Below the pieces are notes generated by a model. It saw only the letters and a list, made by a program, of their open reading frames with translations. It was not told the origin of the DNA and searched no databases. A stretch of 64,000 bases of DNA, taken from positions 186,001 to 250,000 of the IMG/VR virus record IMGVR_UViG_3300050821_013430. One strand, written 5' to 3'. Numbering within the stretch: the first letter of the stretch is position 1; each line of letters starts with the position of its first letter. A program made the position numbers and the translations under genes. Positions 1 to 12,706 of the stretch are shown here, in pieces.

Positions 1-488
1 CAACTTGTACATAGTCGTTTTTCAACTACACCATCGGAAAAAATCTTACCATTTTTGATAAAATCAAGATTTTTTGTTCTATAACCTTCAGATAATGCTT
101 GAGCGGCCAGGCATACAACTCTCTTCATATTTGATGAAGAAAAGGGAGGCAGATGTTCATTAGTCAAAATTTGATCAGGTTTTAAACAGAAAAAGCATGT
201 ACCCCTGATTTCTTTGTTTTCAATAAATTTATTTTTACTAAAAGAGTTCCATTCATATCCATCTGGTACAGATATATTACATTCATATAACTTATGCGCT
301 GGCAAAAATTCCGTATTGCCATACCTTTGATCATATTGGGAATGCAATTTTTTACTAAATTCAGTATAAATGTATGAATTAGGAATTAATATTCCGCTAG
401 AATTCAGAATCCATTTATGTTTTTTTAAATAGTGATATATTTTTTGCCTATCTATATTAGTATTATAAAAATAATCTGCTACTCTAAT
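1..488 (-). CDS. HNH-type endonuclease, runs off the window edge; not in the ORF track (no ATG)
   Basis: Manual translation of an open frame: ...TCFFCLKPDQILTNEHLPPFS...KRLCTS(C), i.e. CxxC, HxxP and LCxxC of HNH/zinc-finger nucleases. Possible ATT start 6 nt after GGAG. Confidence 0.55.
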   Translation of the reverse strand, partial: MRVADYFYNTNIDRQKIYHYLKKHKWILNSSGILIPNSYIYTEFSKKLHSQYDQRYGNTEFLPAHKLYECNISVPDGYEWNSFSKNKFIENKEIRGTCFFCLKPDQILTNEHLPPFSSSNMKRVVCLAAQALSEGYRTKNLDFIKNGKIFSDGVVEKRLCTS

Positions 489-508
489 GTTTTACTCCAT
501 ATAGATAA

Positions 509-1513
509 TTATTTATTATCTAATAATAGTTTTTCTTTTTTCGCTTCTTTCATGTCATAAGCCATCATCTCATCTACCAACGCATTAAAATCATATTTGG
601 GCTCCCATCCAAGTTCTTTCCTAATCTTTGACGCGTCTCCGCATAACGCATCCACTTCGGAAGCACGATAATACTTTGGATCAATTTCAACATAATCTCG
701 ATAATCCATATCGAGTTTGCTAAAAACTATCTCAACAAATTCTCTTACTGATCTCATCTCCCCGCTTGCGATAACGAAATCATCTGCTCGGTCTGCCGTA
801 GCGATAAGATACATGGCCTCTGCCATATCGGCAGCGTGCGACCAGTCTCGTTTCGCTTCCAAATTACCAAGATACAATTTCTCTTGCAATCCAAGTTTGA
901 TTCTGCAAGCAGCGGCGGTGATCTTTTTTGAAACGAAGTTCTCGGATCGTCTATATGACTCATGATTAAATGCTATACTGTTAGAAGCATGTAAATTATA
1001 TGCCTCTCTGTAATTTACTGTTGTATGATACGAAGCGATCTTTGCTGTCGCGTATGGGCTTCTTGGATGGAATAAACTTTTTTCACTTTGTAAAGGTGGG
1101 GTCGAGCCAAACATTTCGGATGAAGATGCTTGTAAGAAATGAGTTTTTGGGCTTGTCTTTCTGATTGCTTCTAATACTCTAACCGTTCCCGTTCCCACAA
1201 CATCCATAACATATTCTGGTATTTCAAAAGAAATTTTCACGTGAGACATCGCTGCCATATTGAAAAATAGATCGGGCTTAATATCTCCTATCCAACTAAA
1301 TAACGAAGATGAATCGCCCAAATCACCATAAGTGAGTTCGAGATTTTTCTTCTTCTCTGGTTCGAGTTCGATATGATCAATTCGTTCGGTGTTAAAAACA
1401 CTCGATCGTCGTTTAAGCCCACAAACCTTATATCCTTTGGATAATAGGAGATCGGTTAAAAAACTTCCCGTTTGTCCGGTGATACCAGTGATACATGCTG
1501 TCCCGATAGTCAT
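509..1513 (-). CDS. gmd: GDP-mannose 4,6-dehydratase
   Basis: ITGITGQTGS nucleotide-binding motif, QASSSEMFG, PRSPYATAK (YxxxK), FNHES, LGNLEAKRDW. Confidence 0.95.
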   Translation of the reverse strand: MTIGTACITGITGQTGSFLTDLLLSKGYKVCGLKRRSSVFNTERIDHIELEPEKKKNLELTYGDLGDSSSLFSWIGDIKPDLFFNMAAMSHVKISFEIPEYVMDVVGTGTVRVLEAIRKTSPKTHFLQASSSEMFGSTPPLQSEKSLFHPRSPYATAKIASYHTTVNYREAYNLHASNSIAFNHESYRRSENFVSKKITAAACRIKLGLQEKLYLGNLEAKRDWSHAADMAEAMYLIATADRADDFVIASGEMRSVREFVEIVFSKLDMDYRDYVEIDPKYYRASEVDALCGDASKIRKELGWEPKYDFNALVDEMMAYDMKEAKKEKLLLDNK

Positions 1514-2619
1514 TTAATTTCCTTCCGTATTTCTTTCCAATCATTTTCCCAAATAGTAATTATGTTATATCCCGCTTCTTTTAACAAAATTTCTCTTTGC
1601 TTAGTATTTTTAAATAACTCACCAAATGAACGTTTGTTGGATAAGTTTGTTTCATTTTCTGAAAAGACTTTTGGATTACCATGCCAATAATCGCCATAAA
1701 ATTCATAAATAGTATTTGTATGAGGATCAAACGCATCTGGTTTAATAGTTTGTTTTCCTATTTTCATCTTTTTAGGATGGCGATATTCTTGCGGAATATT
1801 TAAATAATCTAACCATTCCATTTCTATTTTAGAAATATTTGAAAAACATTCGGGACATCCAGTTCCACGCAAATGATTGTACGGGGCTTGTGAAAAATCG
1901 CCATGTTTAGGACATATTATTATTACGTGTTCATGAGAATGAGTATAAATTGCTTTACTATATAAGTAGTAATCGTTATGTCTGATATTGGCTTGTTCAA
2001 TAAATTCTTGTGTCGTAAGAGTCAGTTTTTGATTGGCTTCTTCCCTACTACATCCAGGACACTTCGCGCCGCTCAAATGATCATTCGGGGCCTGTTTAAA
2101 TTCACCATGAATATGACAATAAATAATGACTGTTATCTTATTAGTTTCATAAACAACTTGTTCATATCCGTATTTATTGTTATGTTTTTCATTTGCTCTA
2201 CGAATAAAATCTTCTCTACCAATTTTACTAGCATCTATTGCGCATAGATTGCATCCTTTTCCTTTAAGATGACCGCTCGCGCGCTGTTTGAATTTTCCAT
2301 GTATTCGACAAATTACAATTATTTTTTCTTTACTTTGACCATAAATTGTTTCACTATAATCGTATAGTGATCCATGAATTTGTTTGGCTTTTAAAATAAA
2401 TTCTTTCGTATTTGAATTTTGTTCTTCGTATTTGCATTTAGAACAACCATGCCCTATAACATGGGATACGGCTCTTTGCCAAAAACTACCATGAATCTGG
2501 CAAATTATTTCTATTTTGGAAAGTGCGCCCCGATAATCCGCCTTACTATAATTAAATTTGTCTCCGTGAATCGTACGGGCTTTTTCTATAAATTCCTCTT
2601 TTGTTCCACGCCTCGACAT
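1510..2619 (-). CDS. Putative homing endonuclease with 4 zinc-binding DUF723-like repeats and C-terminal PD-(D/E)XK-like domain
   Basis: Four repeats YSxxxY...IxCxxHGxFxQ...HxxGxxCxxC; C-terminal KPDAFD...YEFYGDYWHGNP; AT-rich. Confidence 0.7.
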   Translation of the reverse strand: MSRRGTKEEFIEKARTIHGDKFNYSKADYRGALSKIEIICQIHGSFWQRAVSHVIGHGCSKCKYEEQNSNTKEFILKAKQIHGSLYDYSETIYGQSKEKIIVICRIHGKFKQRASGHLKGKGCNLCAIDASKIGREDFIRRANEKHNNKYGYEQVVYETNKITVIIYCHIHGEFKQAPNDHLSGAKCPGCSREEANQKLTLTTQEFIEQANIRHNDYYLYSKAIYTHSHEHVIIICPKHGDFSQAPYNHLRGTGCPECFSNISKIEMEWLDYLNIPQEYRHPKKMKIGKQTIKPDAFDPHTNTIYEFYGDYWHGNPKVFSENETNLSNKRSFGELFKNTKQREILLKEAGYNIITIWENDWKEIRKEIK

Positions 2620-2621
2620 TT

Positions 2622-3758
2622 TTACTCTATATTCGTCAAATATTCATCCAATGTTTTCAGGATATGCTTTTGTTCCCATTTTGATAATTCAGGAAACGAA
2701 GGTAATATCAAACATTCCTTATTCAATCGGTCTGCGTTAGTGCAGTCCCCATCCCATATATCCGGATGATTCTGCAAATGTTTATGCGCCTTGATAGAAT
2801 AAAACATTGGTCTTACTTCGATCCCTTTTTCTCTGAAAAAGGCATCAGCAGCCTCAAATGATTTTTGTTTTGGGATACGGACACCAAACATCCAGTTGGC
2901 GTGAGTAGTTTCTTTTGGAATTGCCTGCATCCGAACATCCTCACGATCTTTGAGATGATTTCGATAGGTCTCGAAAATATTGGCTTTCATTTCTTGAATT
3001 TGAGGTAAGATTTCTAATTGCCCCACGAGAAGGCCAGCCTGCACATTCGTAATGCGGTAATTATAACCCAACTCATTATGAATAAATTTCTTACTTGATT
3101 GCCCTTGTCCTTGGACACATTTGGCAAATTCATAAGCATCCACATCGTTGGTGATGAATGCCCCTCCTTCACCACTCGTAATATTTTTATTGGAAAAGAA
3201 AGAAATGGCGGAAGCAAAAGAAGCAGTACCGGTTTGTTTGTCTTCGTAAGTGCCGAGAAAACCCTCACAATTATCCTCAACGAAAAGGGTCTCGGGGTAT
3301 TTGCGTTGTAGAGCAGGGACGTTGAGAATATTTCCGATGTTATGAACAACGAGTACGGAAGCGTCCGGATATTTTTTGATAGCAGCGTCCAAAAGATTTA
3401 GATCGTAGTTCCAAGTGTTTAGATCGGCATCAACAGGAATAAGAAAAAAATCTCCCCGATCAAAAAGAAAAGCATTCCAAGCGGCGACGTAAACGTTATT
3501 GGGAACAATTAGTTTTTGGAAGAAGGGCGAAAGTTTGAGTTCGACTTGCCAGTAACGAGTAAGCTCTTTGGCCATCAGGTGGCACGCTACTGTTCCGTTG
3601 AAAACTGGCAGAACATATTTGACATCGAGAAGTTCTTGTAGTTTCTCTTGCATCATCTGAACATACTTACCATGGAATGAAATCCAACCAGAATCGAGGG
3701 CATCGTGAGCATATTTCAATGAGGAGGGTGGCAAAAAGGGTTTATGAATAGGGATCAT
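2622..3758 (-). CDS. DegT/DnrJ/EryC1/StrS PLP aminotransferase (perosamine synthase-like)
   Basis: FNGTVACHL, EDNCEG, SFFSNKNITSGEGG (PLP lysine), GYNYRITNVQA; adjacent to gmd. Confidence 0.9.
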   Translation of the reverse strand: MIPIHKPFLPPSSLKYAHDALDSGWISFHGKYVQMMQEKLQELLDVKYVLPVFNGTVACHLMAKELTRYWQVELKLSPFFQKLIVPNNVYVAAWNAFLFDRGDFFLIPVDADLNTWNYDLNLLDAAIKKYPDASVLVVHNIGNILNVPALQRKYPETLFVEDNCEGFLGTYEDKQTGTASFASAISFFSNKNITSGEGGAFITNDVDAYEFAKCVQGQGQSSKKFIHNELGYNYRITNVQAGLLVGQLEILPQIQEMKANIFETYRNHLKDREDVRMQAIPKETTHANWMFGVRIPKQKSFEAADAFFREKGIEVRPMFYSIKAHKHLQNHPDIWDGDCTNADRLNKECLILPSFPELSKWEQKHILKTLDEYLTNIE

Positions 3759-3764
3759 TTTTAT

Positions 3765-4442
3765 TTATACCTGATCAAACTTTATCACTTCTGGGTCTTG
3801 ATCTTTTATTAAATACTTATATGTAAGTCCGGCTTTTTCGCATATTATATCCAATGATTTGCCTTCGAAAAAGAATAAATGAAATTTGGTAAATTCATAA
3901 CAATACTTATAGCAAGGCGTTGAATGCACCATACTTGCACCTGGTTTAAGCAAGGATTTCATCAATCTTAATTCACTAATTGGGTCTTGCAGGTGTTCTA
4001 ATAAATTATGAGAAATGATACCGTCAAATTTTATTTCATTTATTTTTTCTTTACTTAGCGTATCTATTTTCATAAATGGATCGTAATTTAATAATGTATA
4101 TCCTAACTCTTTCGCTTTATTTCCTGCTGGGGAAATTTGACTTCCCCAATTTAAATATATACCATTTGGATTTGGGCTAAGCGCTAATAAATTGGCAACC
4201 TCACGCATAATCGAAGCCTCATCGCCATCACGATATCCACTATCAAATACTTTTTGATATGCTTCACCCAATTTTTCTTTGGATAGATTTAACATTTGTT
4301 GCGTTCCAAAAATAACACCACAATCTGGACATTTATGTCTTACTAGGTGTTGATCTAATCCATCTATTGGTAAAAATAGACAATCACTCTCCAAAATACC
4401 AAAAGTATCTCCTTGATATTGGCAAATTGGACAAATCATCAT
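3765..4442 (-). CDS. Class I SAM-dependent methyltransferase-like protein with N-terminal CxxC pairs
   Basis: CPIC/CPDC N-terminus; FDGIISHNLLEHLQDP...LLKPG motif. Confidence 0.65.
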   Translation of the reverse strand: MMICPICQYQGDTFGILESDCLFLPIDGLDQHLVRHKCPDCGVIFGTQQMLNLSKEKLGEAYQKVFDSGYRDGDEASIMREVANLLALSPNPNGIYLNWGSQISPAGNKAKELGYTLLNYDPFMKIDTLSKEKINEIKFDGIISHNLLEHLQDPISELRLMKSLLKPGASMVHSTPCYKYCYEFTKFHLFFFEGKSLDIICEKAGLTYKYLIKDQDPEVIKFDQV

Positions 4443-5107
4443 TTTATTCTAATAGCAATACCAACGCCCGGCTCCGATACTGTATAAGCGTGATACTCAA
4501 AATTTGTATATAACTGTTGTATATCTCTAAATACTTGATCTAAATGTCCGCCATGATTTGGATTCAACACAATATCATCAAATAATAATATACCGCCAAT
4601 ATTGAGCCGTGACATTGTATTATTGAGATCATCGCGCGCCCCGTTATCTGAATGATCCCCATCTACCAAAATTAGGTCGAACATCATTTCAGGATTTTTC
4701 TGGAAAAATTCAGGCACTGTTTGATGGCTATTTCCATTGAAAAAATGGATTTCTTTCTGATATCCTAATTTCTTCATTTCTCTGGCAACAAAGTCTGGGC
4801 CCGGATTAGGAGAATTGCAATAGTCAGGCTCCCACACATCAAAACAATATAATTCGCATTCGGGAGCAGCAACGGCGACCATACCCAATGACCACCCGCG
4901 GCGAGTACCAATTTCTAAATAATTTTTTGGTTTTAGAAGTTTAGCGGCCCAAGCAACAAACCCACGGGTTTCACCCCACCCCGCGTTGAGCATACTTATT
5001 AAATAGGGCCCTATAACCTGATCTTCTTCCATTGCTGTTATGATATCTTTGACAAAAAGAATGTTATTGGGATCACGAACTCCCGTGAATATTTGTTCGG
5101 ATTCCAT
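4439..5107 (-). CDS. Class I SAM-dependent methyltransferase (Methyltransf_24-like)
   Basis: YLEIGTRRGWS, FDLILVDGDHS, GGILLFDD. Confidence 0.8.
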   Translation of the reverse strand: MESEQIFTGVRDPNNILFVKDIITAMEEDQVIGPYLISMLNAGWGETRGFVAWAAKLLKPKNYLEIGTRRGWSLGMVAVAAPECELYCFDVWEPDYCNSPNPGPDFVAREMKKLGYQKEIHFFNGNSHQTVPEFFQKNPEMMFDLILVDGDHSDNGARDDLNNTMSRLNIGGILLFDDIVLNPNHGGHLDQVFRDIQQLYTNFEYHAYTVSEPGVGIAIRIK

Positions 5108-5126
5108 TTAGGCCTTATATAAATGT

Positions 5127-5957
5127 CTAATTTGTATATAAACTTTTCAATTTCTGAATAAATTGAAACCAATTTTTGGCTATATACGCGGTATCATACT
5201 GAGAATTACCAATCAAATTAACCACCGCATCATTATCATCTCTATACCCAATAGTATTAGCAACTGCCAATGGCATCCATAAATTGCCCCCAATACCAAT
5301 AGAAATGACAAACTTAGACTCCTTCATAATAAGGCAGTCTTGTTGAATTTGTTTTAGTGTAGGAACGGTAACGCCCAATGCGGGAATAGTCAAATCTATA
5401 ATTCGATCATTTGGAATATTTTCTATTATTTGATCATAGATACAAAAGATAGAGCTTCTATTTACACTAACATCGTATTCTTTATTTTTTTCTATTTCTC
5501 TTTCCCCCAAAACAACGATTTTATATCTCTGAGAAATTTTTTGTAATACTTCCCATAAAGTGGGAGATAGTTTAGTAAATACAGATTTTAGTATGCCTCT
5601 AATTTTTGTGGTCAAAACTATATACTCTCCTCCCAAATTTAGAGAAGTGCCTTTACATAACAAATGAGATAGATTAGGGGTTTTAGGAGGTGTTCCTAAA
5701 TTAGTGAGAGTATTAACGGTATGTATAACCGTATGATTGAAATGATCAAAAGCATATGGTGGTTCGGTGAATAATAGATTTCCCAACTCATCCAAAAACT
5801 GATAATATTTCGGATCACCTTTTCTCCAAAAATCTACAATTTTCCTATCATGAGAAATTCTAATTTCCTCATATTCGTGCTTTACGGCATCAAAAAATAT
5901 TCTAATAACAAGGCTATCTCCGAGACCCCCGGCTATTGTTAGTGCGGTTTTTTTCAT
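5127..5957 (-). CDS. GT9 (heptosyltransferase)-like glycosyltransferase paralog 1
   Basis: N-terminal GGLGD; shares LCKG...EYIVxTTKxR and DLTIPALG...QIQQDCLIM...GxGGN blocks with the next two genes. Confidence 0.45.
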   Translation of the reverse strand: MKKTALTIAGGLGDSLVIRIFFDAVKHEYEEIRISHDRKIVDFWRKGDPKYYQFLDELGNLLFTEPPYAFDHFNHTVIHTVNTLTNLGTPPKTPNLSHLLCKGTSLNLGGEYIVLTTKIRGILKSVFTKLSPTLWEVLQKISQRYKIVVLGEREIEKNKEYDVSVNRSSIFCIYDQIIENIPNDRIIDLTIPALGVTVPTLKQIQQDCLIMKESKFVISIGIGGNLWMPLAVANTIGYRDDNDAVVNLIGNSQYDTAYIAKNWFQFIQKLKSLYTN

Positions 5958-6805
5958 AGATATTTTTTTAGTGTTTTAATAAAATGCAGCCAATTTTTAG
6001 TAACTATCGCATTGGGATATTCTTTACTATATATAATATCCGCGAATATAGCGGTGTCAGTTCTAAATCCTATTACCATTTTTGCTACCGATTGGGCCAT
6101 GCAAGTATTACCGCCAATGCCAAGAGTGATACAAAATTTAGCTTCATTCATAATAAGACAATCTTGTTGTATCTGCGTTATATCAGATACTGTTTCCCCA
6201 AGTGCTGGGACAGTTAAATCCACGATACGATCGGCTGGTAGATTAGCTATAATTTGTTCATAAATCCCAAACACTGAGGATTTAATATTGTCATATTCTT
6301 TACGCATTTCTACAACACGTTCCCCTAAAACAACTATTTTATATTTTTTAGATAGTTCTCGTAGCACTTTCCATAATTCTACCGAGAGAGGAAGAAAAAG
6401 ATATTTCTCTAATTGCCTTAATTTAGTAGTAATAACTATATACTCTTCTCCTAAATTGAGAGGAGCGCCTTTACATAGGAAATGGGCCATTTCCGCTTTT
6501 TGCGGTGTTAATCCTAATTTTTGTACTAAGACGCCACAATCTCCACCATAAACAGGCGAATCTAGCTCTAATATATAAGGAGGTTCTGAAAAAAATAATT
6601 TGCCAAGATCTGCTAAAAGTTTATCCCATAATTGCTTTTTATGTGGCCAATCTGGCGCTTCCATATGCAAACCGCCCTCCCATAATTTGGTATGGAAACT
6701 TAATTTGATTTGGTCGTATTGATTTTTAATAAGATCCAAATGATATTTTATATTTATAATTTCCCCAAGGGAAGTTGGTATTCCCCCATAATCTAAAACT
6801 CTCAT
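5954..6805 (-). CDS. GT9-like glycosyltransferase paralog 2
   Basis: Same conserved blocks; TSLGE in place of GLGD. Confidence 0.45.
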   Translation of the reverse strand: MRVLDYGGIPTSLGEIINIKYHLDLIKNQYDQIKLSFHTKLWEGGLHMEAPDWPHKKQLWDKLLADLGKLFFSEPPYILELDSPVYGGDCGVLVQKLGLTPQKAEMAHFLCKGAPLNLGEEYIVITTKLRQLEKYLFLPLSVELWKVLRELSKKYKIVVLGERVVEMRKEYDNIKSSVFGIYEQIIANLPADRIVDLTVPALGETVSDITQIQQDCLIMNEAKFCITLGIGGNTCMAQSVAKMVIGFRTDTAIFADIIYSKEYPNAIVTKNWLHFIKTLKKYL

Positions 6806-7632
6806 TATGATCCTTCCAATGTTTTGATAAATTCATCCCAATTTTTGAATATTTTTGCAGAAGTGAAATTAGGATTTAGAATTATATCAGCAGCATAATC
6901 ATTATCTGTTTCGTTCCTATAACCAATTACTTTATTACCTGCCGTTGCAGCGAGCCAAACATTACCACCAAGGCCTAAGGTTATAATAAATTTTGCCCGC
7001 TGCATGATCAATCCATCTTGTTGTATTTGCGGTAATGTGGGCGCCGTGACTCCTAATGCCGGAATAGTCAAATCTATTACACGATCTGTCGGAAGGTTGG
7101 TTATAATTTGATCATAAATTCCATAGGCTAAATCCATAAAATGTCCGTATTCAACATTTTTTTCTACTTCTCTTTCTCCTAAAATAACTATTTTGTATTT
7201 AGTAGATAGTTTTTGTAATACTTTCCATAATTTGATAAGCATTGGAAGTATTTTTTTTCTTGATATTGCTCTAATTTTAGTAGTAATAACCACATACTCT
7301 TCATCTATACTAATCGGAGTTCCCTTACATAAAAGATGCTGTAATTTTGGTTTGGTAACAGGGACAGAAAGACTTTTTACCGTATTTAGAGTATGAATGG
7401 CTTGATAAGCATTATGATCGAAAATATATGGAGGCTCTGTAAATAATAAAGTCCCTATATCATCTAAGAATTTTAGATAAGCGCTATCGCCATTTTTATG
7501 GTGGCGAATAACATTTTTGTCATGCGAAATCTTAATCAAATTATATTCATGTTTTACTGTATCAAAAATGATACGAGCGACGATATTATCGCCCAAACCT
7601 AAACAGATTGATGTAGATATCTGTTTCATCAA
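6805..7632 (-). CDS. GT9-like glycosyltransferase paralog 3
   Basis: LGLGD N-terminus and same conserved blocks. Confidence 0.45.
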   Translation of the reverse strand: MMKQISTSICLGLGDNIVARIIFDTVKHEYNLIKISHDKNVIRHHKNGDSAYLKFLDDIGTLLFTEPPYIFDHNAYQAIHTLNTVKSLSVPVTKPKLQHLLCKGTPISIDEEYVVITTKIRAISRKKILPMLIKLWKVLQKLSTKYKIVILGEREVEKNVEYGHFMDLAYGIYDQIITNLPTDRVIDLTIPALGVTAPTLPQIQQDGLIMQRAKFIITLGLGGNVWLAATAGNKVIGYRNETDNDYAADIILNPNFTSAKIFKNWDEFIKTLEGS

Positions 7633-7934
7633 TATGTTTTATGTTGATCTTGTATAAATGATCCATTATCCAAATCTTGTGTTTTAGAAACCATAATCAT
7701 TTCTACTACTTTTTTATCTACTTCCAAAATGATCTGCTGCCTTTGCACGTTTAGATCGCAAGACTTCTTGAAAGCATCAAAAAGTTTTGCAAGTCCAACA
7801 TCATCGCTACCGTATGTGGTCTTGAATTCGTCGAAAGTCATTCTTCGTATAGCATACAAATTTTCTTGTACCATAAACATTTTTTGATTTATTGTTGCTA
7901 ATTTGTCAATGAGCGATCCAAGTGTATCTGACAT
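7629..7934 (-). CDS. Small helical protein, DUF4254-like
   Basis: TLGSLIDKLATIN resembles the DUF4254 'GSxIDxLSI' motif; coupled by stop/start overlap. Confidence 0.4.
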   Translation of the reverse strand: MSDTLGSLIDKLATINQKMFMVQENLYAIRRMTFDEFKTTYGSDDVGLAKLFDAFKKSCDLNVQRQQIILEVDKKVVEMIMVSKTQDLDNGSFIQDQHKTY

Positions 7935-7946
7935 AATATTCTCCGT

Positions 7947-8567
7947 CTATTTTCTTATTAGTTTTTTGGCAGGTATCCCCACATAAATACCAGGATCTAC
8001 TATATCCTTGGCTACACAAGCAGCGGCACCAATTACAACATTATTGCAAATATCAATACTTTCAATAGAGGAGGCGTTGGTGCCAAAATAAACACATTCC
8101 CCCGCATTTACTTTCCCACTAATATGCACGCCCGGGGCAGTGGTGAAAAACTGGCCAGTCGTGGTATCATGCCCGATAGTAGTGGCCAAATTTAGTTGGG
8201 ACCAAGCTCCCAATTTTACATCACAAGTAATAATGCAATTGGCACAAACAACGGAGCCATAGCCTATCTCAATGGTTTTAGACATCAAATTGGCTGAGGG
8301 CGAAATCAATGTCTCAAAAATATCTTCCGTTCTATGACGGTCTCGTATTTTAGACACTATCTTTTTTCTAAGTTGGGAGTCTCCTACCGCTATCACGGCG
8401 TAGTGTTTAGTCGGATCAAAATATTCTTCTGATTCTATTTTCTTATCGCAACAATATCCACCATATTCAACATCAATAAATGCCTCTACTTCTTTACCAC
8501 ATTGATTGGCTAACCAAAAAACTTCTTTGGCAAATCCACCCGATCCGAATATACAAATTTTCTTCAT
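7947..8567 (-). CDS. Sugar acetyltransferase, NeuD/PglD/PerB family (left-handed beta-helix)
   Basis: IFGSGGFAKEV, VIAVGD, hexapeptide repeats IGYGSVV/IGHDTT, YVGIPAK. Confidence 0.88.
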   Translation of the reverse strand: MKKICIFGSGGFAKEVFWLANQCGKEVEAFIDVEYGGYCCDKKIESEEYFDPTKHYAVIAVGDSQLRKKIVSKIRDRHRTEDIFETLISPSANLMSKTIEIGYGSVVCANCIITCDVKLGAWSQLNLATTIGHDTTTGQFFTTAPGVHISGKVNAGECVYFGTNASSIESIDICNNVVIGAAACVAKDIVDPGIYVGIPAKKLIRK

Positions 8568-9214
8568 CTTGAATAAACCGGTTTTGGAACACCATTATCC
8601 ATATCTTTGATGCTTGGCAAAATTCTTACATTGCCATCAATATCATCACAATCAAAAGCCACAATCATCAATCGTAATCCTTTTGATTGTACAACGCTAG
8701 AGGCCCTATGCAAATCTCTCGCAGTATATTCTATCATTTGATTTTTTGGTGCAGAAACGATATCATGGGGTTCTCCTAATTTTTTAGAAAGAGCATTGTC
8801 CCATAAATCCCATTTTTCTTTTGTATCTTTGGTTTCTAAATTATTGGGCAATTCCATTGGCGTATCAATAAATTCAGTAGAAGGCCCCGCCCCCCATGAA
8901 ATTACCATCAAATGAAATTCATCATGATTTTTAGCATAGACCTTTTTATCTAAAAGTCTAACATTATAGTCCGTATGCCAGTGTTTTCCATCGATACCGG
9001 CCTCGCCCGCTCTAAAATCTTGGGGTCTAATTTGGAGAATATTTTTCCGACCATCAAATGGAAACTGATCTAAAAGATCAATAAGAAATTTAGGAGCACC
9101 GGAAGTCTTGACTTGATCATAACTCATTGCAAAATAATGCGGACAATTATAGATATCTTCCTGGGCTGGGGCCTCAATAATTTTAGTGAATTTATGAGTT
9201 GTATTATAGAGCAT
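8564..9214 (-). CDS. Putative 2OG-Fe(II) dioxygenase-like protein
   Basis: WHTD (HxD) plus distal LHRA...LR pattern of double-stranded beta-helix oxygenases. Confidence 0.4.
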   Translation of the reverse strand: MLYNTTHKFTKIIEAPAQEDIYNCPHYFAMSYDQVKTSGAPKFLIDLLDQFPFDGRKNILQIRPQDFRAGEAGIDGKHWHTDYNVRLLDKKVYAKNHDEFHLMVISWGAGPSTEFIDTPMELPNNLETKDTKEKWDLWDNALSKKLGEPHDIVSAPKNQMIEYTARDLHRASSVVQSKGLRLMIVAFDCDDIDGNVRILPSIKDMDNGVPKPVYSR

Positions 9215-10133
9215 TTGCTAACCTTTCATCTAACATATTCAATACTTTTTTAGTATTAGTTTCGGTCGAAAGCGAAAATTCTGCTGAATACTTCACTTTA
9301 TCTTGCAACATCGTGCTTAGCCAAAATTGCTCTGGTTTTTTCGGCATCACAATCGGTTTGACGAAACCAATAAATTTGACCTTCCGCTTGAACAAATTTT
9401 CCTGAGTAAGAGCAAAAGTCCATACACCAGAAGCCCGTCCGATGATGGTATCGCAGTGAGTGCTGAGAAAAGAAACCTCATTTAGATCGGATAATTGTTT
9501 ATCTTTCTTCTTGATAATGTTGGAAGTATAAACTACATTGTCCGGCAATTTGATATTAGCACCCTTGGACAAGATGAAAATCTTATCCATATGTTTCTTG
9601 GCCAATTCGGCAATAATGGGGGCCATATCAAAATTGACCGCCTGATTGGAAGCGGCAGCACCGTTCTCAATCAAAATCTTGGGGCCAGTATGTTCCTCTA
9701 ACCACCTCTGAGTTTCCTCAATCTCAAACTTAGAATAGTCAATGGCAGGAAAGAAATCGGATACCTCAGTCGAGATATCGGATAGTGAAAATTCCCATAA
9801 TTTTTTGCAGGTATCGTCGAAGGCTTCGTAGAGGCTATCGATGGTCAGCCCATATTTCCGAAAGTATTTCAATCCTTGCTGGCAGTACCAGGTATTGACA
9901 TAAACATCATCGCCCAATCTAATAAAATTGGCATATTGATCGACATTTTTATAGGCGAGCGGATCGTAGCCGAGATTTGGAATATCCGAGAGTAAATTGA
10001 ATGGGTTTGGATGTGAATAGGTAAATGTTGTTTCGGGGCACTGCTCTTTGACCTTTTGCATAATCAAACGAACAAATGATCTCCCGGTATGAATATCCCC
10101 CCGGTGATGGTGGGAAAAGAACACAATTCTCAT
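9204..10133 (-). CDS. Putative GT-B fold glycosyltransferase-like protein
   Basis: HRGDIHTGRSFV N-terminus, DLNEVSFLSTHCDTIIGRASG C-terminal block; cluster context. Confidence 0.35.
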   Translation of the reverse strand: MRIVFFSHHHRGDIHTGRSFVRLIMQKVKEQCPETTFTYSHPNPFNLLSDIPNLGYDPLAYKNVDQYANFIRLGDDVYVNTWYCQQGLKYFRKYGLTIDSLYEAFDDTCKKLWEFSLSDISTEVSDFFPAIDYSKFEIEETQRWLEEHTGPKILIENGAAASNQAVNFDMAPIIAELAKKHMDKIFILSKGANIKLPDNVVYTSNIIKKKDKQLSDLNEVSFLSTHCDTIIGRASGVWTFALTQENLFKRKVKFIGFVKPIVMPKKPEQFWLSTMLQDKVKYSAEFSLSTETNTKKVLNMLDERLANAL

Positions 10134-11542
10134 AGAATGGATGGCCCAACAAATAGGTAGGGGCCGGTCGTGCGGTCTTCTTCTGAATGATTTCTAACAT
10201 TGGAATTATGATGGTGATAGGCCCTAATAGACTTACTGGGATTGATTACCGTATAGTTCGCGTTGCTAAACTCTTGGGCAAGCCTTTCATCGCACCCCGG
10301 CATTCCAAGCCTAAAATCCGCACTCACACCCTCTATCTTGCCGCGGAATATCCAAGCATCTTGATTTTTTTCATCGAGAACGGGAGGTTTAGTTGGCTCA
10401 CAATTCCAACGACTGAGAGCATAAATTGTGTTAGGGGGCATTCTATCAATCAATGCTATGGTACCATCGAAATAAATATCCGAGTTGCAAATAATTGCAA
10501 TATCATTATCCCCACTAATCTGATTGACTTTCTGAAAGAGAAAATCAAAAGTTGGGTTATCATCGGAACTTACAATGATGATATCGAAAAGAGAGTTCTC
10601 AATGTTCTTCTGCAAGCAGAAATCTATCTCGGCTTTTCGTTGAGGGTCTTTGTCTTCATAGTAATTATAGAACAAGCGCACTTTGCTGGTCAATTTGGGG
10701 ACGGGCAGTTGAAATGGTGATGACGACGGAGCCGGAGGTGGGCGGGGCGGAGTAGGCTTACGATGATAAGTAGTAGCCGGGCGAAGCGGAGTTCTTGCTT
10801 GCGGTTTCAGCACTTCTGCTATTTTTCTATTGTCGGGGGCTGCATCGATAGAAGCGATTGGGGCGATGATCTGAGATGAGGGATTGGATTGAATAACGAG
10901 CTTAGCGTCTGTGGAAGCGGTGGCAAACCAAATGCGACGATTATGCGGCAATGCTTCGAGAGTATTTTTGAGGGGCCAGTTATATTGGAAAGGATCGGTG
11001 TTAAGTTTTGCTTCGTCTTTTCTATTGAAAGAAGCCCCTGCACCCTTGATAATTTGTTCTATTTTTTCAGCAGTGCCAATTGAGCCAAAACCGTTATAGG
11101 AAAAGGTTTGTTCGAGCCTATTCTCTTGATAAACTAACTCTTTGCTGACATCGCCGCTATTGATGACCGAAGTTTCTAAAACGAATTGTTTGGCGCAAGA
11201 CAAAATATTCTTGATATGTTGCTCGTAATTTTTCAAATGACAGGCGGTATCAATAGAAAGGACAAGATCAAAAGTTTGATTTTGGAAAGGCCAGTTATGA
11301 TCGAGGTCTGACCTGATGGTCTTTATTCCTGGAAATTTCTGAGAAACGAGTTTTAGATGTTGATCTCTGGCATCAACTACGGTAATTTCTCCGCCAAGAC
11401 GAAAAAGTGCTCCCGCCAATTCGCCCGTACCACAGCCAAGATCGAGGATTTTCTTGCCCCAAAAAAACGGGTGGCCATAATGATCAACTATCGCTTTTAC
11501 GATGCGATGCGACCATTCGTGATAACGAGGGCCAAGATGCAT
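10130..11542 (-). CDS. Fusion: SAM methyltransferase + Pro-rich linker + GT-A-like domain
   Basis: KILDLGCGTG; PTPPRPPPAP linker; IICNSDIYFD (DxD-like)...ALSRW...QDAWIF. Confidence 0.6.
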   Translation of the reverse strand: MHLGPRYHEWSHRIVKAIVDHYGHPFFWGKKILDLGCGTGELAGALFRLGGEITVVDARDQHLKLVSQKFPGIKTIRSDLDHNWPFQNQTFDLVLSIDTACHLKNYEQHIKNILSCAKQFVLETSVINSGDVSKELVYQENRLEQTFSYNGFGSIGTAEKIEQIIKGAGASFNRKDEAKLNTDPFQYNWPLKNTLEALPHNRRIWFATASTDAKLVIQSNPSSQIIAPIASIDAAPDNRKIAEVLKPQARTPLRPATTYHRKPTPPRPPPAPSSSPFQLPVPKLTSKVRLFYNYYEDKDPQRKAEIDFCLQKNIENSLFDIIIVSSDDNPTFDFLFQKVNQISGDNDIAIICNSDIYFDGTIALIDRMPPNTIYALSRWNCEPTKPPVLDEKNQDAWIFRGKIEGVSADFRLGMPGCDERLAQEFSNANYTVINPSKSIRAYHHHNSNVRNHSEEDRTTGPYLFVGPSIL

Positions 11543-11543
11543 C

Positions 11544-11711
11544 TTAGCCCGTCTCCGATCGCTTGGCTCTAATGAATACTTCTGGTTCTTTGGAATGCTC
11601 GGTTAGAGAAGAAGTAAAACCACAACCTTTGCATTTGACCTGCTTCTGGGCACCTAACTCAGAGATGATATCGAGTTCATCTTCGCAGAGGAGACATTTC
11701 AATAGCCTCAT
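11544..11711 (-). CDS. Small zinc-ribbon protein (55 aa, not in ORF track)
   Basis: Manual translation MRLLKCLLCEDEL...VKCKGCGF; GGAG SD upstream; stop 1 nt before next start. Confidence 0.55.
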   Translation of the reverse strand: MRLLKCLLCEDELDIISELGAQKQVKCKGCGFTSSLTEHSKEPEVFIRAKRSETG

Positions 11712-11818
11712 ACTGCTCCTAATCCGGCCCAGGACGAATGATTAGAAGTAGGATGGGGGTAGAGGGCTAAGGGCGTCTCGGCGTCATATAAGTCAAACTG
11801 GTTCATCTTTCTTTGCTT

Positions 11819-12706
11819 TCAATATCCTCGGTGTTTTCTACTGGCCTTTTCGGAAGCATTCTTGCCCTTGGTAGTCAATTGTAATCCTACCCCGCTGCGT
11901 TTGATATACTCTGCGGCAATTAGTTGCTCAATAGCATCCGCTACACCAGGCCCAAGTTCCGCCAAATACTGCTTTCGATAGCCCGCTTTCAATCGAAAGA
12001 TGGCCAAGATTTTCTCTTGCAGTTCCGGCAGTTCTTCCTCTTGAGTCAATGTAGCCGGAGCCATCGAGGGTGGCAAGACCACCGTGGCAAAAATATGTTG
12101 CCCCGCTTTGCCTAAGATGATGGCAGTATCATCAGGAATAGCATACACATTCTCATCCCAATCTACCGTTGATTTCTCAAACATATTCTTTCCGCCAAAA
12201 TTACCATATTGAGAAGAGACTTGCCCAGTTTTCAAATCTACTTTGGCGAAAAACAAACGACTGCCATCTCCGCTAGCATACCCACTCAATTTGGTATTGG
12301 GACTGATTTTTACTTCGACATCTCTTTTATTATAGCCGAAATGACGCAGGGCTTTTTGGATGGCCGGATGCAAATCTTTTATGTCCATCTGCACACCGCG
12401 TTGATAGGAATACGGCTCTTCGCTCTTGGTCAATTCGCTGAAACTTTCGGTTGGCTCTGCCTCTATTTGGGGCTGATCCTGCACCATAGCATCCAAAATT
12501 TCCTTGGCCGCATTGATCTCTACCGTCTTAGCGTGGGCTTCCGGGGAAGGATTGACATCGGGATGAAATTCCAAAACCCTTTCTCGATAGGCTTTATTGA
12601 GTTGTTCCTGAGTAAATGGTGATTGTAAGCCCAAAATATCGAGGGCTTGTTGATGAGTGAGGGTGGCTAATTTGAGGAAATAATAGGCTTTTCGGTGCAA
12701 ATCCAT
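11819..12706 (-). CDS. J-domain (DnaJ-type) protein with unknown C-terminal region
   Basis: ALDILGL...LNKAYRERVLEFHPDVNP...EINAAKEIL with HPD motif. Confidence 0.85.
   Translation of the reverse strand: MDLHRKAYYFLKLATLTHQQALDILGLQSPFTQEQLNKAYRERVLEFHPDVNPSPEAHAKTVEINAAKEILDAMVQDQPQIEAEPTESFSELTKSEEPYSYQRGVQMDIKDLHPAIQKALRHFGYNKRDVEVKISPNTKLSGYASGDGSRLFFAKVDLKTGQVSSQYGNFGGKNMFEKSTVDWDENVYAIPDDTAIILGKAGQHIFATVVLPPSMAPATLTQEEELPELQEKILAIFRLKAGYRKQYLAELGPGVADAIEQLIAAEYIKRSGVGLQLTTKGKNASEKASRKHRGY

What the first reader, a model, noticed from the sequence alone, without database searches (positions are those of the whole stretch)
509..11542. Phage-encoded GDP-(N-acetyl)perosamine-type glycan pathway with its own transferases and tailoring enzymes
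Seen: gmd, a DegT aminotransferase, a PerB/NeuD-like acetyltransferase, three methyltransferase domains, four GT-B-like proteins, one GT-A-like domain and a putative oxygenase in one coupled run. Established: Gmd, Per and PerB make GDP-4-acetamido-4,6-dideoxymannose. Inference: the phage builds a methylated/acetylated glycan for virion glycosylation, host surface conversion or possibly DNA modification. No flippase or polymerase (Wzx/Wzy) is visible, which argues against a full O-antigen locus.
Basis: partly seen in the sequence, partly recalled or inferred. Interest (0 to 1): 0.6.

Follow-up and report, generated by a model that had tools for sequence, protein, structure and literature searches.

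The report
Huge-phage operon for a methylated amino-sugar glycan
A 472-kb soil phage carries a tightly packed 13-gene operon that should turn host GDP-mannose into an N-acetyl-perosamine-type sugar and build a methylated oligosaccharide with its own soluble transferases; related huge phages share the cassette, and what it decorates is still unknown.

Summary
Window 509-11542 (minus strand) is one gene run with overlapping or nearly abutting reading frames. It encodes Gmd, a perosamine-synthase-like DegT aminotransferase, a VioB/PerB-like N-acetyltransferase and three methyltransferase domains. It also encodes four proteins whose AlphaFold models (pLDDT 94-96) are GT-B folds closest to GT9 heptosyltransferases.

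The "oxygenase" (8564-9214) rests only on an invariant HxD...H...R motif. The "GT-A-like" domain (C-terminus of 10130-11542) rests only on motifs and on fusions to real GT domains in other proteins.

One is an HNH homing endonuclease inserted between DegT and Gmd. The other is a DUF4254 protein (7629-7934), the best-conserved non-enzymatic member.

The contig is viral (472,749 bp, CheckV 100%). At least 14 other huge-phage contigs carry the cassette, with 1-5 copies of one GT family. Both GT families have their nearest viral structural relatives in giant-virus MAGs.

No cluster protein has a membrane segment. The genome has no ManC, Wzx, Wzy, initiating phosphoglycosyl transferase or TET-like enzyme.

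Best reading: a cytoplasmic glycan-building system that needs no lipid carrier, most likely acting on a phage protein. A GxT-rich collagen-like fibre protein elsewhere in the genome is a candidate acceptor. The acceptor is inferred, not shown.

The parts
11003..11542 (-). N-terminal class I SAM methyltransferase domain (residues about 1-180) of the 470-aa first gene, 10130-11542
   Evidence: PF13649 and PF08241 E 1e-13, PF13489 E 3e-12. Best PDB hit is the SAM-dependent MT 8k76, E 1e-7.
10133..10687 (-). C-terminal domain of about 185 aa (residues about 286-470) of the same protein, behind a Pro-rich linker. It is a putative glycosyltransferase-like (GT-A-like?) module and the fold is unverified.
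   Evidence: The family in alignment A3 has invariant motifs NSDIYFD, SRWD, SQDAW, CDNR and NP..H.H. Homologues occur standalone (about 260 aa) or fused to PF13524, PF00535, PF01755, PF03016 or PF00777 GT domains. No Pfam or PDB hit.
9204..10133 (-). GT-B glycosyltransferase, GT9-like ('GT9b' family), 309 aa
8564..9214 (-). Putative Fe(II)/2-oxoglutarate-type oxygenase, 216 aa (motif-level call only)
   Evidence: Invariant H80, D82, H169 and R181, and near-invariant R170, in 17 homologues. phrog_1843, function unknown. No Pfam or PDB match. Atlas gives a weak lead to DUF1826. Present in only about 6 of 15 related cassettes.
7947..8567 (-). NeuD/PglB/VioB/PerB-type sugar 4-N-acetyltransferase (left-handed beta-helix), 206 aa
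   Evidence: PglD_N 44.6 bits against a cut-off of 23.4. TIGR03570 158 bits against 160.8. PDB hits VioB 7txp 5e-29 and PerB 4ea7 6e-18. H133 lies in the 'IGHD' motif.
7629..7934 (-). DUF4254-family small helical protein, 101 aa, translationally coupled to the next GT9a gene
   Evidence: 6 of 16 homologues match PF14063, best E 1.6e-6. It is 51-79% identical across cassettes and always lies next to a GT9a gene. Function unknown.
6805..7632 (-). GT-B glycosyltransferase, GT9-like ('GT9a' family), paralogue 1, 275 aa
5954..6805 (-). GT9a paralogue 2, 283 aa
   Evidence: 43% identical to paralogue 1 in A1. A1 HMM 382 bits.
5127..5957 (-). GT9a paralogue 3, 276 aa
   Evidence: 53% identical to paralogue 1 in A1. 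A1 HMM 416 bits.
4439..5107 (-). Cation-dependent O-methyltransferase-like protein (Methyltransf_24/3), 222 aa
   Evidence: PF13578 E 2e-16 and PF01596 E 2e-9. Best PDB hit is caffeoyl-CoA O-MT 1sui, E 2.5e-5.
3765..4442 (-). Class I SAM methyltransferase (Methyltransf_23) with an N-terminal CxxC...CxxC zinc-ribbon-like segment, 225 aa
   Evidence: PF13489 E 1.6e-11. Sequence read.
2622..3758 (-). DegT-family PLP aminotransferase, perosamine-synthase-like, 378 aa
   Evidence: PF01041 E 4e-59. Best NCBIfam is the LegC family at 187 bits, below its cut-off. Best PDB hits are perosamine synthetases 3bn1, 3dr7 and 3dr4, E about 4e-32. Lys191 lies in the 'SFFSNK' motif, so it is an aminotransferase rather than a ColD-type dehydratase.
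1510..2619 (-). HNH/DUF4379 homing-endonuclease-like gene inserted between DegT and Gmd. It is an intruder, not a pathway gene.
   Evidence: phrog_559 HNH endonuclease E 1e-58. PF14311 E 9e-10. A paralogue lies at 47783-49132. It is absent from this position in all related cassettes.
509..1513 (-). GDP-mannose 4,6-dehydratase (Gmd), 334 aa
   Evidence: TIGR01472 equivalog 417.6 bits against a cut-off of 415. PF16363 E 5e-115. Motifs GxxGxxG, 'KRRSS', S132-E133 and Y154xxxK158 are present.

Best explanation
The operon is a phage-encoded, cytoplasmic glycan-building system. It uses the host's GDP-mannose pool but needs no lipid carrier or export machinery of its own.

Step 1 (well supported): Gmd makes GDP-4-keto-6-deoxymannose. 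The Per-like PLP aminotransferase adds a C4 amino group. The VioB/PerB-like acetyltransferase N-acetylates it. The product is a GDP-4-acetamido-4,6-dideoxyhexose, of the GDP-N-acetylperosamine type.

Step 2 (fold shown, activity inferred): four soluble GT9-like GT-B transferases (three paralogues plus one of a second family) assemble a short oligosaccharide. The C-terminal domain of the first gene probably contributes a transfer as well. Donors would be this sugar and host nucleotide sugars.

Step 3 (inferred): two or three SAM methyltransferases cap or tailor it, and a putative Fe/2OG oxygenase may hydroxylate the glycan or the acceptor.

Step 4 (inferred, least certain): the acceptor is a soluble phage protein made in the cytoplasm, most likely a virion surface protein. 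The Thr-rich collagen-like fibre proteins encoded at genome 90-99 kb are the best candidates, by analogy with Mimivirus fibrils, B. anthracis BclA/anthrose and glycosylated mycobacteriophage virions.

The DUF4254 protein is probably an accessory partner of the GT9a enzymes. The HNH gene is a selfish insertion.

Rough sub-confidences: sugar pathway 0.75; the four proteins are active glycosyltransferases 0.7; virion-protein acceptor 0.4.
For: Enzyme assignments: (Gmd above the equivalog cut-off; catalytic Lys191, His133 and S/E/YxxxK present; nearest solved relatives are Per, VioB and PerB).

GT-B/GT9-like folds with high-confidence models.

Solubility: no hydrophobic 19-mer above 1.45 Kyte-Doolittle in any cluster protein.

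Whole-genome absences: no ManC; no Wzx, Wzy/ligase, Bac_transf or WecA-type transferase.

Cassette conservation:
- It recurs in the same order in at least 14 other contigs of 120-500 kb, classed as viral or with phage-like gene content (one lies in a MAG bin), and in the 636-kb LR756504.
- GT9a copy number varies from 1 to 5, and the MT and oxygenase content also varies. This pattern is expected of a surface glycan under diversifying pressure.
- Cassette GC tracks each genome's local GC, 28-44%, so it is long resident.

Relatives of the GT families:
- Among 50,697 GenBank phage records they occur only in uncultured huge phages.
- Their best viral structural relatives are giant-virus MAG proteins (Hyperionvirus, Solumvirus, Mimivirus LCMiAC01). 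One 581-aa Solumvirus protein matches both families. In giant viruses such machinery decorates capsid fibrils (PMC9614988).

Candidate acceptors and parallel loci in the same genome:
- A 2349-aa protein has 13 collagen-like segments with Thr at the Y position in 153 of 343 triplets. It sits beside a GT2+GT4 fusion, a GT1, two SDRs and a sugar C-methyltransferase.
- A GT4 plus pyruvyl-transferase pair lies at window 59721-61943.
Against: - No acceptor is identified by any direct evidence.
- The cassette is never adjacent to a collagen-like or recognisable structural gene in the 20-kb loci examined. It sits among replication and RNA-repair-type genes (Thg1, RNA ligase, NUDIX, DnaJ).
- The known acceptors of characterised GT9 enzymes are mostly lipid A-core, which would favour a host-envelope target.
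- The aminotransferase reaches no NCBIfam equivalog cut-off, so nucleotide and stereochemical specificity are not established.
- Several related cassettes show no Gmd within the fetched 20 kb.
- The oxygenase and GT-A-like calls are motif-level only.
- There are no expression data; no RNA run holds the locus.
Confidence: 0.45

Rival explanations
1. Host envelope remodelling. During infection the phage GT9-like enzymes act at the cytoplasmic face of the inner membrane on host lipid A-core or another lipid-linked glycan. They add N-acetylperosamine-type and methylated sugars, which the host's own machinery then exports. This would change the cell surface, for example for superinfection exclusion or receptor masking.
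For: The nearest solved folds are the LPS-core heptosyltransferases WaaC and WaaF. Characterised GT9 enzymes are peripheral, not integral, membrane proteins, so the lack of TM segments is compatible. N-acyl-perosamine is a classic O-antigen sugar (own knowledge; PMC9614988). LPS-like gene sets are known in cyanomyoviruses (own knowledge), and weak DegT hits to Synechococcus phages appear.
Against: The whole genome has no initiating transferase, flippase, polymerase or ligase. Pfam GT9 (PF01075) does not match any gene. TibC, a protein-glycosylating GT9 enzyme, scores nearly as well as WaaC and WaaF. The same families occur in giant viruses of eukaryotes, which have no LPS. A cassette inherited vertically across phages with local GC of 28-47%, presumably with different hosts, would have to fit many different host acceptors.
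Confidence: 0.25
2. DNA hypermodification. The transferases attach the sugar(s) to a modified base in phage DNA to block host nucleases.
For: Phage GT-A and GT-B enzymes related to LPS and teichoic-acid enzymes can glycosylate 5hmC, including with heptose and Kdo (bioRxiv 10.1101/2023.12.21.572611). The cluster has an HxD...H protein and methyltransferases, which superficially resembles MT + 5mYOX + GT clusters. All proteins are soluble.
Against: There is no Tet_JBP match anywhere in the genome. The methyltransferases are small-molecule or O-MT types (Methyltransf_23/24/25), not C5-cytosine MTases. The single ThyA-family gene lies 240 kb away and scores 336 bits, like a canonical thymidylate synthase. 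T4 beta-GT is not among the top 50 structural matches of either model. Five transferase modules are far more than known DNA systems use.
Confidence: 0.07
3. Another soluble target. The operon might make a free glycoside or secondary metabolite. It might instead glycosylate an RNA or a host protein, for example to inactivate a host factor, rather than a virion component.
For: Thg1-like and RNA-ligase genes flank the cassette in most relatives. A CCoAOMT-like O-MT and an oxygenase are also typical of natural-product tailoring. The DegT/AHBA-synthase family is used in antibiotic sugar pathways (PMC12801897).
Against: The cassette has no aglycone-forming enzymes (PKS, NRPS or terpene). The flanking synteny may only reflect collinear genomes. 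Variable GT copy number fits a polymeric surface glycan better.
Confidence: 0.1
4. The region is a cellular polysaccharide locus, on a mis-binned or chimeric contig or recently captured from a bacterium, with no phage function.
For: Cluster GC is 37.3% against 45.3% for the genome. Some homologous contigs are deposited in Saccharimonadia and Bacteroidales MAGs.
Against: The record is viral and rated complete. The same order recurs in many contigs of 120-500 kb, classed as viral or with phage-like gene content, with GC tracking each genome. The MAG contigs carry the same phage-type neighbours: Thg1, RNA ligase, Acb5 and HNH. An independent assembly spans the junctions. A homing endonuclease sits inside the operon.
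Confidence: 0.03

Closest known systems
Bacterial GDP-perosamine / GDP-N-acetylperosamine pathway (Gmd-Per-PerB; Caulobacter crescentus, E. coli O157, Vibrio cholerae O1)
   Same: The same three enzyme families in one operon. The nearest solved relatives of the aminotransferase and, as second-best hit, of the acetyltransferase are the Caulobacter Per and PerB enzymes. Gmd passes the equivalog cut-off.
   Different: It is encoded by a phage. There is no ManB/ManC, no Wzx/Wzy or ABC exporter, and no lipid-carrier initiation. The acetyltransferase is closer to VioB, a dTDP-viosamine enzyme. The sugar's stereochemistry is untested.
Mimivirus fibril-glycan gene cluster (R141 dehydratase, L136 aminotransferase, L142 acetyltransferase-GT, several GTs, methyltransferase, L143 pyruvyl transferase; PMC9614988)
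   Same: A virus-encoded 4,6-dehydratase, C4-aminotransferase and N-acetyltransferase make a 4-acetamido-4,6-dideoxyhexose that is O-methylated and placed on virion fibrils by several viral GTs. This phage also has collagen-like proteins and a pyruvyl transferase. The GT9a and GT9b families have their best viral structural relatives in Mimiviridae-like MAGs.
   Different: A GDP-mannose (manno) route instead of UDP-glucose (viosamine). A bacterial virus. GT9-like GT-B enzymes rather than the Mimivirus GT set. The acceptor is not known here.
CAZy GT9 heptosyltransferases (WaaC, WaaF, TibC/BAHT)
   Different: No sequence-level match to PF01075. They are 40-70 residues shorter. The two phage families are not detectably related to each other by hhalign. 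Donor and acceptor are unknown.
Chlorovirus PBCV-1 capsid glycosylation (GMD A118R; A064R = GT-GT-methyltransferase fusion; PMC9614988)
   Same: A virus-encoded Gmd, cytoplasmic virus-encoded GTs and a methyltransferase fused to a transferase module. The product is a methyl-capped glycan on the capsid protein.
   Different: A eukaryotic virus whose pathway continues to fucose and rhamnose rather than to an amino sugar. The GT families are different.
Mycobacteriophage virion glycosylation (Che8, Corndog; Freeman et al. 2023, cited in PMC12801897; details from own knowledge)
   Same: Phage-encoded GTs and O-methyltransferases decorate capsid and tail proteins in the cytoplasm.
   Different: Those genes lie beside the structural genes and use host nucleotide sugars. 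No amino-sugar pathway and no GT9-like enzymes have been reported there.
Bacillus anthracis BclA / anthrose (own knowledge; anthrose structure in PMC9614988)
   Same: A GxT-rich collagen-like surface fibre O-glycosylated with an oligosaccharide that ends in a 2-O-methyl-4-acylamido-4,6-dideoxyhexose. This genome has both such a fibre protein and a pathway to that class of sugar.
   Different: The system is bacterial. The sugar has the gluco configuration and a different acyl group. The link between the cassette and the collagen-like proteins here is only a hypothesis.
Phage DNA-glycosylation gene clusters (MT + 5mYOX/ThyS + GT; 10.1101/2023.12.21.572611)
   Same: Soluble phage GTs recruited from LPS-type enzymes, clustered with MT and oxygenase-like genes.
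   Different: No C5-MT, TET/JBP or hydroxymethylase is linked to the cassette. There are many more transferases, plus an amino-sugar pathway.

Membership tests
GDP-N-acetylperosamine pathway (Gmd-Per-PerB) | GDP-mannose 4,6-dehydratase present and catalytically intact | tested here: met
   TIGR01472 417.6 bits against a cut-off of 415. GxxGxxG, KRRSS, S132-E133 and Y154xxxK158 present.
GDP-N-acetylperosamine pathway (Gmd-Per-PerB) | C4 aminotransferase specific for GDP-4-keto-6-deoxymannose | tested here: inconclusive
   DegT family with Lys191. The best solved relatives are perosamine synthetases, E 4e-32. The best NCBIfam is the GDP-sugar LegC family at 187 bits against a cut-off of 420. Specificity was not assayed.
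GDP-N-acetylperosamine pathway (Gmd-Per-PerB) | 4-N-acetyltransferase of the NeuD/PglD/PerB class | tested here: met
   PglD_N above cut-off. TIGR03570 158 bits against 160.8, just under. VioB 5e-29 and PerB 6e-18. Catalytic-type His133 present.
GDP-N-acetylperosamine pathway (Gmd-Per-PerB) | Product has manno configuration (perosamine rather than another 4-amino-4,6-dideoxyhexose) | not testable with these tools
   Needs NMR or MS of the reconstituted product.
GDP-N-acetylperosamine pathway (Gmd-Per-PerB) | Own GDP-mannose supply (ManB/ManC) | tested here: not met
   No PF00483 match in the 472,749-bp genome, so the pathway must draw on the host pool.
CAZy GT9 glycosyltransferases | GT-B fold with GT9 enzymes as closest structures | tested here: met
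CAZy GT9 glycosyltransferases | Sequence membership (Pfam Glyco_transf_9) | tested here: not met
   No PF01075 hit for any ORF, even at E 10, or in a six-frame genome search. They therefore work like, but are not filed as, GT9.
CAZy GT9 glycosyltransferases | ADP-heptose donor and Kdo/heptose acceptor | not testable with these tools
   Needs enzymology.
Wzx/Wzy- or ABC-dependent O-antigen/capsule locus | Initiating phosphoglycosyl transferase, flippase, polymerase or ligase | tested here: not met
   PF01943, PF04932, PF02397 and PF00953 are absent from the whole genome. No TM segment in the cluster.
Phage DNA sugar-hypermodification cluster | Linked base hydroxymethylase, 5mC dioxygenase or C5-MT | tested here: not met
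   No Tet_JBP. The single ThyA-like gene lies at 437.6 kb and scores 336 bits. The cluster MTs are Methyltransf_23/24/25. PF00145 itself was not searched.
Fe(II)/2-oxoglutarate oxygenases | HxD/E...H facial triad plus a basic residue for 2OG, on a double-stranded beta-helix | tested here: inconclusive
   The triad and Arg are invariant in A4. No Pfam or PDB sequence match.
GT-A glycosyltransferases | Rossmann-like GT-A fold with a DxD metal site | tested here: inconclusive
   The invariant 'NSDIYFD' and the distal H.H are compatible, and homologues are fused to GT domains. No profile hit to PDB, Pfam or a GT92 protein. The fold was not modelled.
DUF4254 (PF14063) | Match to the family profile | tested here: met
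   6 of 16 aligned homologues match, best E 1.6e-6. The window's own copy does not reach significance alone but is 51-79% identical to those that were aligned.
Virus-encoded virion glycosylation systems | Virus encodes both the nucleotide-sugar pathway and the transferases | tested here: met
Virus-encoded virion glycosylation systems | A virion protein carries the glycan | not testable with these tools
   The phage is uncultured and there are no proteomic data. The candidate GxT-rich collagen-like proteins are only inferred.

The most novel reading that the evidence does not exclude
Soil huge phages and soil giant viruses share an undescribed protein-glycosylation system that is independent of lipid carriers. 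It has two GT9-like transferase families, a DUF4254 partner and a GDP-N-acetylperosamine-type pathway. It coats GxT-rich collagen-like virion fibres with a methylated amino-sugar glycan, a viral counterpart of the BclA/anthrose and Mimivirus fibril coats. GT copy-number variation would generate glycan diversity between related phages.
Probability: 0.22. Interest if true: 0.75.

Novelty: new variant of a known kind. Interest (0 to 1): 0.55.

Why it matters
Virus-encoded, host-independent glycosylation is established for giant viruses and for a few mycobacteriophages, but not for the huge phages of soil.

This cassette is conserved in contigs of 120-500 kb that are classed as viral or have phage-like gene content, and it is absent from every cultured phage in GenBank. 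It contains two unannotated transferase families and a DUF4254 protein with no known role. It therefore gives concrete, clonable candidates for several new activities:
- a phage GDP-amino-sugar pathway;
- GT9-like enzymes that probably do not act on LPS;
- a possible function for DUF4254.

The structural kinship with giant-virus proteins raises the question of gene flow, or shared solutions, between the largest viruses of bacteria and of eukaryotes in the same habitat.

If the glycan is on the virion it would bear on host recognition, particle stability in soil and antigenic masking. If it is on the host envelope it would be a new superinfection-exclusion route.

Tried and rejected
- Near-identity DNA search of the cluster against GenBank phages: no match.
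- Sequence-profile searches of A1-A5 against the PDB: nothing significant.
- Pfam at E up to 10 for the seven unassigned ORFs or domains: only noise.
- hhalign of A3 against a GT92 protein from a related locus, and of A1 against A2: no similarity.
- Promoter and terminator scans over 1-13500: counts equal to shuffled expectation, so uninformative.
- Pfam Terminase_6C in the genome: no match. I did not pursue other hallmark structural families. Viral status rests on the IMG/VR/CheckV record, rIIA, T4 RNA ligase and the homing endonucleases.
- Literature on DUF4254: two incidental mentions only.
- A paper linking GDP-perosamine with virus-encoded pathways: none found. PMC10527164 (mycobacteriophage virion glycosylation) is not held.
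- Collagen-like ORFs next to the cassette in 20 related loci: none, so adjacency gives no support for the proposed acceptor.
- RNA evidence: no RNA run holds the locus.
- No alternative genetic code was needed. All ORFs are open under table 11.

Full report
**What is there**

The window is bases 186,001-250,000 of a single 472,749-bp virus record that CheckV rates as complete. Between 11542 and 509 the minus strand carries 13 ORFs. Their junctions overlap by 1-11 nt or are separated by at most 19 nt, so "one coupled run" is correct.

An independent Logan contig of 69 kb from the probable source sample, a soil metagenome, spans window 300-6200 without a single difference. A second soil study holds fragments of the aminotransferase and methyltransferase genes at 94-100% identity. 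A second IMG/VR record (L008) has the identical cluster.

**The sugar-nucleotide part**

- ORF 509-1513 is a GDP-mannose 4,6-dehydratase. It scores 417.6 bits against the TIGR01472 equivalog (cut-off 415) and E 5e-115 against PF16363. It keeps the Rossmann motif, the KRRSS NADP motif, S132-E133 and Y154xxxK158.
- ORF 2622-3758 is a DegT-family enzyme with the Schiff-base lysine (K191 in SFFSNK), so it is an aminotransferase and not a ColD-type dehydratase.
  - Its best solved relatives are the Caulobacter perosamine synthetases (3bn1, 3dr7, 3dr4; E about 4e-32).
  - Its best NCBIfam model is the LegC family of GDP-sugar C4 aminotransferases, well below that model's cut-off.
- ORF 7947-8567 is a NeuD/PglB/VioB-type left-handed beta-helix acetyltransferase. 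PglD_N is above its cut-off, and TIGR03570 scores 158 bits against 160.8. The best solved relatives are VioB (5e-29) and perosamine N-acetyltransferase PerB (6e-18), and H133 lies in an IGHD motif.

Established biochemistry of these families (Gmd, Per, PerB) gives GDP-4-acetamido-4,6-dideoxy-D-mannose. What the sequence shows is a GDP-4-acetamido-4,6-dideoxyhexose pathway of that type. The stereochemistry and nucleotide preference are inferred.

The genome has no NTP_transferase (ManC) homologue, so GDP-mannose must come from the host.

**The transferases**

None of the remaining ORFs matches a Pfam glycosyltransferase family.

The three ORFs 5127-5957, 5954-6805 and 6805-7632 are paralogues, 43-53% identical. 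Their family has about 100 members in the big protein collection, many on contigs of 200-500 kb.
- An AlphaFold2 model built on 51 sequences has mean pLDDT 94.3 and two Rossmann-like halves.
- Foldseek puts E. coli WaaF first, at E 5e-7.

ORF 9204-10133 belongs to a second family, which hhalign does not relate to the first.
- The ESM Atlas lists almost purely viral clusters, with a viral GT9 cluster at TM 0.64.

Both families keep a Gly-Asp pair at the end of the first strand (invariant G14 in GLGD; invariant G12-D13). That is where WaaC has its catalytic Asp13; this comparison is from my own knowledge.

More precisely they are GT9-like in fold but not GT9 members by sequence, since PF01075 finds nothing in the genome.

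**The two weaker calls**

ORF 8564-9214 has only 26 relatives at E 1e-3 or better among 1.8 billion representatives.
- The alignment shows invariant H80, D82, H169 and R181 and near-invariant R170. This is the pattern of an Fe(II)/2-oxoglutarate oxygenase.
- No Pfam or PDB profile match exists, and the Atlas holds no model.
- It is an optional member, present in about 6 of 15 related cassettes.

The first gene (10130-11542) is an N-terminal class I methyltransferase, then a proline-rich linker, then a C-terminal domain of about 185 residues.
- That domain defines a family with invariant NSDIYFD, SRWD, SQDAW, CDNR and NP..H.H motifs.
- Elsewhere it occurs alone (about 260 aa) or fused to bona fide glycosyltransferase domains: PF13524, PF00535, PF01755, PF03016 and PF00777.
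- This is what one expects of a further transferase module, and the motifs are compatible with a DxD-type GT-A. Profile searches found nothing, and I had no structure predictions left. The GT-A call is therefore unproven.

- 3765-4442 is a Methyltransf_23 enzyme with a CxxC...CxxC N-terminus.
- 4439-5107 is a cation-dependent O-methyltransferase-like protein (Methyltransf_24/3; best PDB hit caffeoyl-CoA O-MT).
- 1510-2619 is an HNH/DUF4379 homing-endonuclease-like gene (phrog_559, E 1e-58) with a paralogue at 47783-49132. It fills exactly the DegT-Gmd intergenic space and is absent there in every relative. It is a selfish insertion, not a pathway gene.
- 7629-7934 (101 aa, helical) belongs to DUF4254: 6 of 16 homologues match PF14063, best E 1.6e-6. 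It is 51-79% identical across cassettes and always sits beside a GT9a gene, even in the most divergent loci. I infer that it is an accessory partner of GT9a.

**Conservation**

The same gene order recurs in the 636-kb LR756504 genome and in at least 14 further contigs of 120-500 kb, classed as viral or with phage-like gene content. The order is: MT-fusion, GT9b, (oxygenase), acetyltransferase, DUF4254, GT9a x 1-5, DegT, (two MTs), (Gmd).
- A few homologous contigs are deposited in Saccharimonadia or Bacteroidales MAGs, but they carry the same phage-type neighbours (Thg1, RNA ligase, Acb5, HNH). I read them as mis-binned phage DNA.
- The cassette's GC follows each genome's local GC, from 28% to 44%, and is usually a little lower. 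Here it is 37.3% against 45.3% genome-wide. That argues for long residence rather than recent capture.
- HMMs of all five unannotated families find no second copy elsewhere in this genome.
- Among 50,697 GenBank phage records the two GT families occur only in the uncultured 636-735-kb phages, so no cultured model exists.

**Relatives in giant viruses**

In the BFVD library, the best matches of both models are proteins of metagenomic giant viruses.
- GT9a: Hyperionvirus (E 6e-18, TMq 0.76, 23% identity), Mimivirus LCMiAC01, and Solumvirus including a methyltransferase fusion.
- GT9b: the 581-aa Solumvirus protein A0A3G5AGL4 (E 2e-22, TMq 0.83, 27% identity). The same protein also matches GT9a (TMq 0.76) and is as long as the two together.
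- One related locus (L021) is a giant-virus MAG contig with the acetyltransferase next to a GT9a-like gene.

If those bins are clean, the two families work together and are shared between the largest viruses of bacteria and of eukaryotes. If not, the giant-virus bins contain huge-phage DNA. I could not decide between the two.

**What it acts on**

No cluster protein has a hydrophobic segment: the maximum Kyte-Doolittle 19-mer average is 1.45. The whole genome lacks Wzx, Wzy/ligase, Bac_transf and WecA-type families. The system is therefore soluble and cannot by itself start or export a lipid-linked polymer.

The DNA reading is weak.
- There is no TET/JBP gene.
- The only ThyA-family gene lies 240 kb away and scores like a canonical thymidylate synthase.
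- The methyltransferases are of the small-molecule type.
- T4 beta-GT is not among the top structural matches. This contrasts with the DNA-glycosylating phage GT-B enzymes described in 10.1101/2023.12.21.572611.

The host-envelope reading remains possible, because the closest folds are LPS-core enzymes that work at the inner face of the membrane.

I favour a phage protein acceptor for four reasons:
- TibC, a protein-glycosylating GT9 enzyme, matches almost as well as WaaC and WaaF.
- The families are shared with viruses whose hosts have no LPS.
- GT copy number and tailoring genes vary between close relatives, as surface glycans do.
- This genome is otherwise rich in virion-glycan hallmarks.

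Those hallmarks are as follows. At 77.8-99.2 kb the genome encodes a 2349-aa protein with 13 collagen-like segments in which Thr occupies the Y position of 153 of 343 G-X-Y triplets. The same region holds a 318-aa collagen-like protein, a pectate-lyase-like protein, a GT2+GT4 fusion, a GT1, two SDR enzymes and a sugar C-methyltransferase. At window 59721-61943 there is a GT4 enzyme next to a polysaccharide pyruvyl transferase.

GxT-rich collagen-like fibres carrying a methylated 4-acylamido-4,6-dideoxyhexose are known from B. anthracis BclA/anthrose (own knowledge). Mimivirus fibrils carry 2-O-methyl-N-acetylviosamine made by an analogous dehydratase, aminotransferase and acetyltransferase set (PMC9614988).

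Against this reading, the cassette is never adjacent to a collagen-like or recognisable structural gene in the loci I fetched. It lies among RNA-repair and replication genes, and there are no expression data.

**Verdict**

The pathway inference is well supported at the family level. The phage origin is secure, and the target is unresolved, with a virion protein as the leading hypothesis.

The kind of system, a virus-encoded autonomous glycosylation system, is known. This version is new in three respects: a GDP-amino-sugar route, two unannotated GT9-like families plus DUF4254, and restriction to uncultured huge phages with kin in giant-virus MAGs. I found no paper describing it.

Noticed in passing
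G000:C1:77837-99244 (outside the window; loci L034, L035): A second glycan locus lies beside candidate virion fibres. It holds a 2349-aa protein with 13 collagen-like segments (Thr at Y in 153 of 343 G-X-Y triplets), a 318-aa collagen-like protein, a pectate-lyase-like 685-aa protein, a GT2+GT4 fusion (829 aa), a GT1 (696 aa), two SDR epimerase/dehydratases and a sugar C-methyltransferase (Methyltransf_14/13). Further collagen-like ORFs lie at 399.8 kb and 464.5-466.9 kb.
   Followed up: partly
window 59721-61943 (-): A GT4/GT1-family glycosyltransferase (59721-60986) lies directly next to a polysaccharide pyruvyl transferase (60990-61943, PF04230 E 1.6e-14). This is a third glycan-related locus. 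It recalls the pyruvyl transferase of the Mimivirus fibril cluster.
   Followed up: partly
window 31162-32313 (-): A short (383 aa) adenylosuccinate-synthetase-family gene (PF00709 260 bits; phrog_1211) lies just downstream of rIIA (33272-35392). It could be a PurZ-type enzyme for 2-aminoadenine DNA or an ordinary PurA. The neighbours 28799-30357 and 32310-33287 have no Pfam match.
   Followed up: no
window 1510-2619, 21625-22674, 37017-39436, 47783-49132, 58702-59700; genome 178439-179197: The density of free-standing homing-endonuclease-like genes is unusually high: HNH/DUF4379 x2, further HNH x2, LAGLIDADG x2 and GIY-YIG. These coincide with low-GC patches of the window.
   Followed up: partly
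BFVD hits A0A3G5AGL4, A0A3G5AAP1, A0A3G5AJ32, A0A481Z0Z4; locus L021: The nearest viral structural relatives of both GT9-like families are proteins of soil and sediment giant-virus MAGs (Solumvirus, Hyperionvirus, Mimivirus LCMiAC01). One 581-aa Solumvirus protein matches both families. This is either a real phage/giant-virus shared module or huge-phage contigs mis-binned as giant viruses.
   Followed up: partly
loci L003-L005, L010-L016, L020; genome 183741-184505: A Thg1-like (tRNA-His guanylyltransferase family) gene flanks the cassette in most related phages, on either side, often with an RNA ligase, a Metallophos protein and an Acb5-family gene nearby. This may be conserved synteny only.
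   Followed up: no
L004/L005 (contigs deposited in a 'Saccharimonadales' MAG), L025, L028, L026, L027: Contigs carrying the cassette are filed in Saccharimonadia and Bacteroidales MAGs. Their gene content looks like huge-phage DNA, so these bins probably contain phage contamination, or the labels hint at hosts.
   Followed up: partly
window 20293-21363 (-): An N6/N4 DNA methyltransferase (PF01555 E 1e-58) with an N-terminal DUF2188 domain. It is a phage-encoded DNA methylase unrelated to the glycan cluster.
   Followed up: no
window 11819-13320 (-): A DnaJ-domain protein (11819-12706) and a NUDIX hydrolase (12724-13320) lie immediately upstream of the operon, behind a 276-nt gap. They are not conserved next to the cassette in relatives, except for a NUDIX gene in L028. 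A NUDIX enzyme could in principle act on nucleotide sugars.
   Followed up: no
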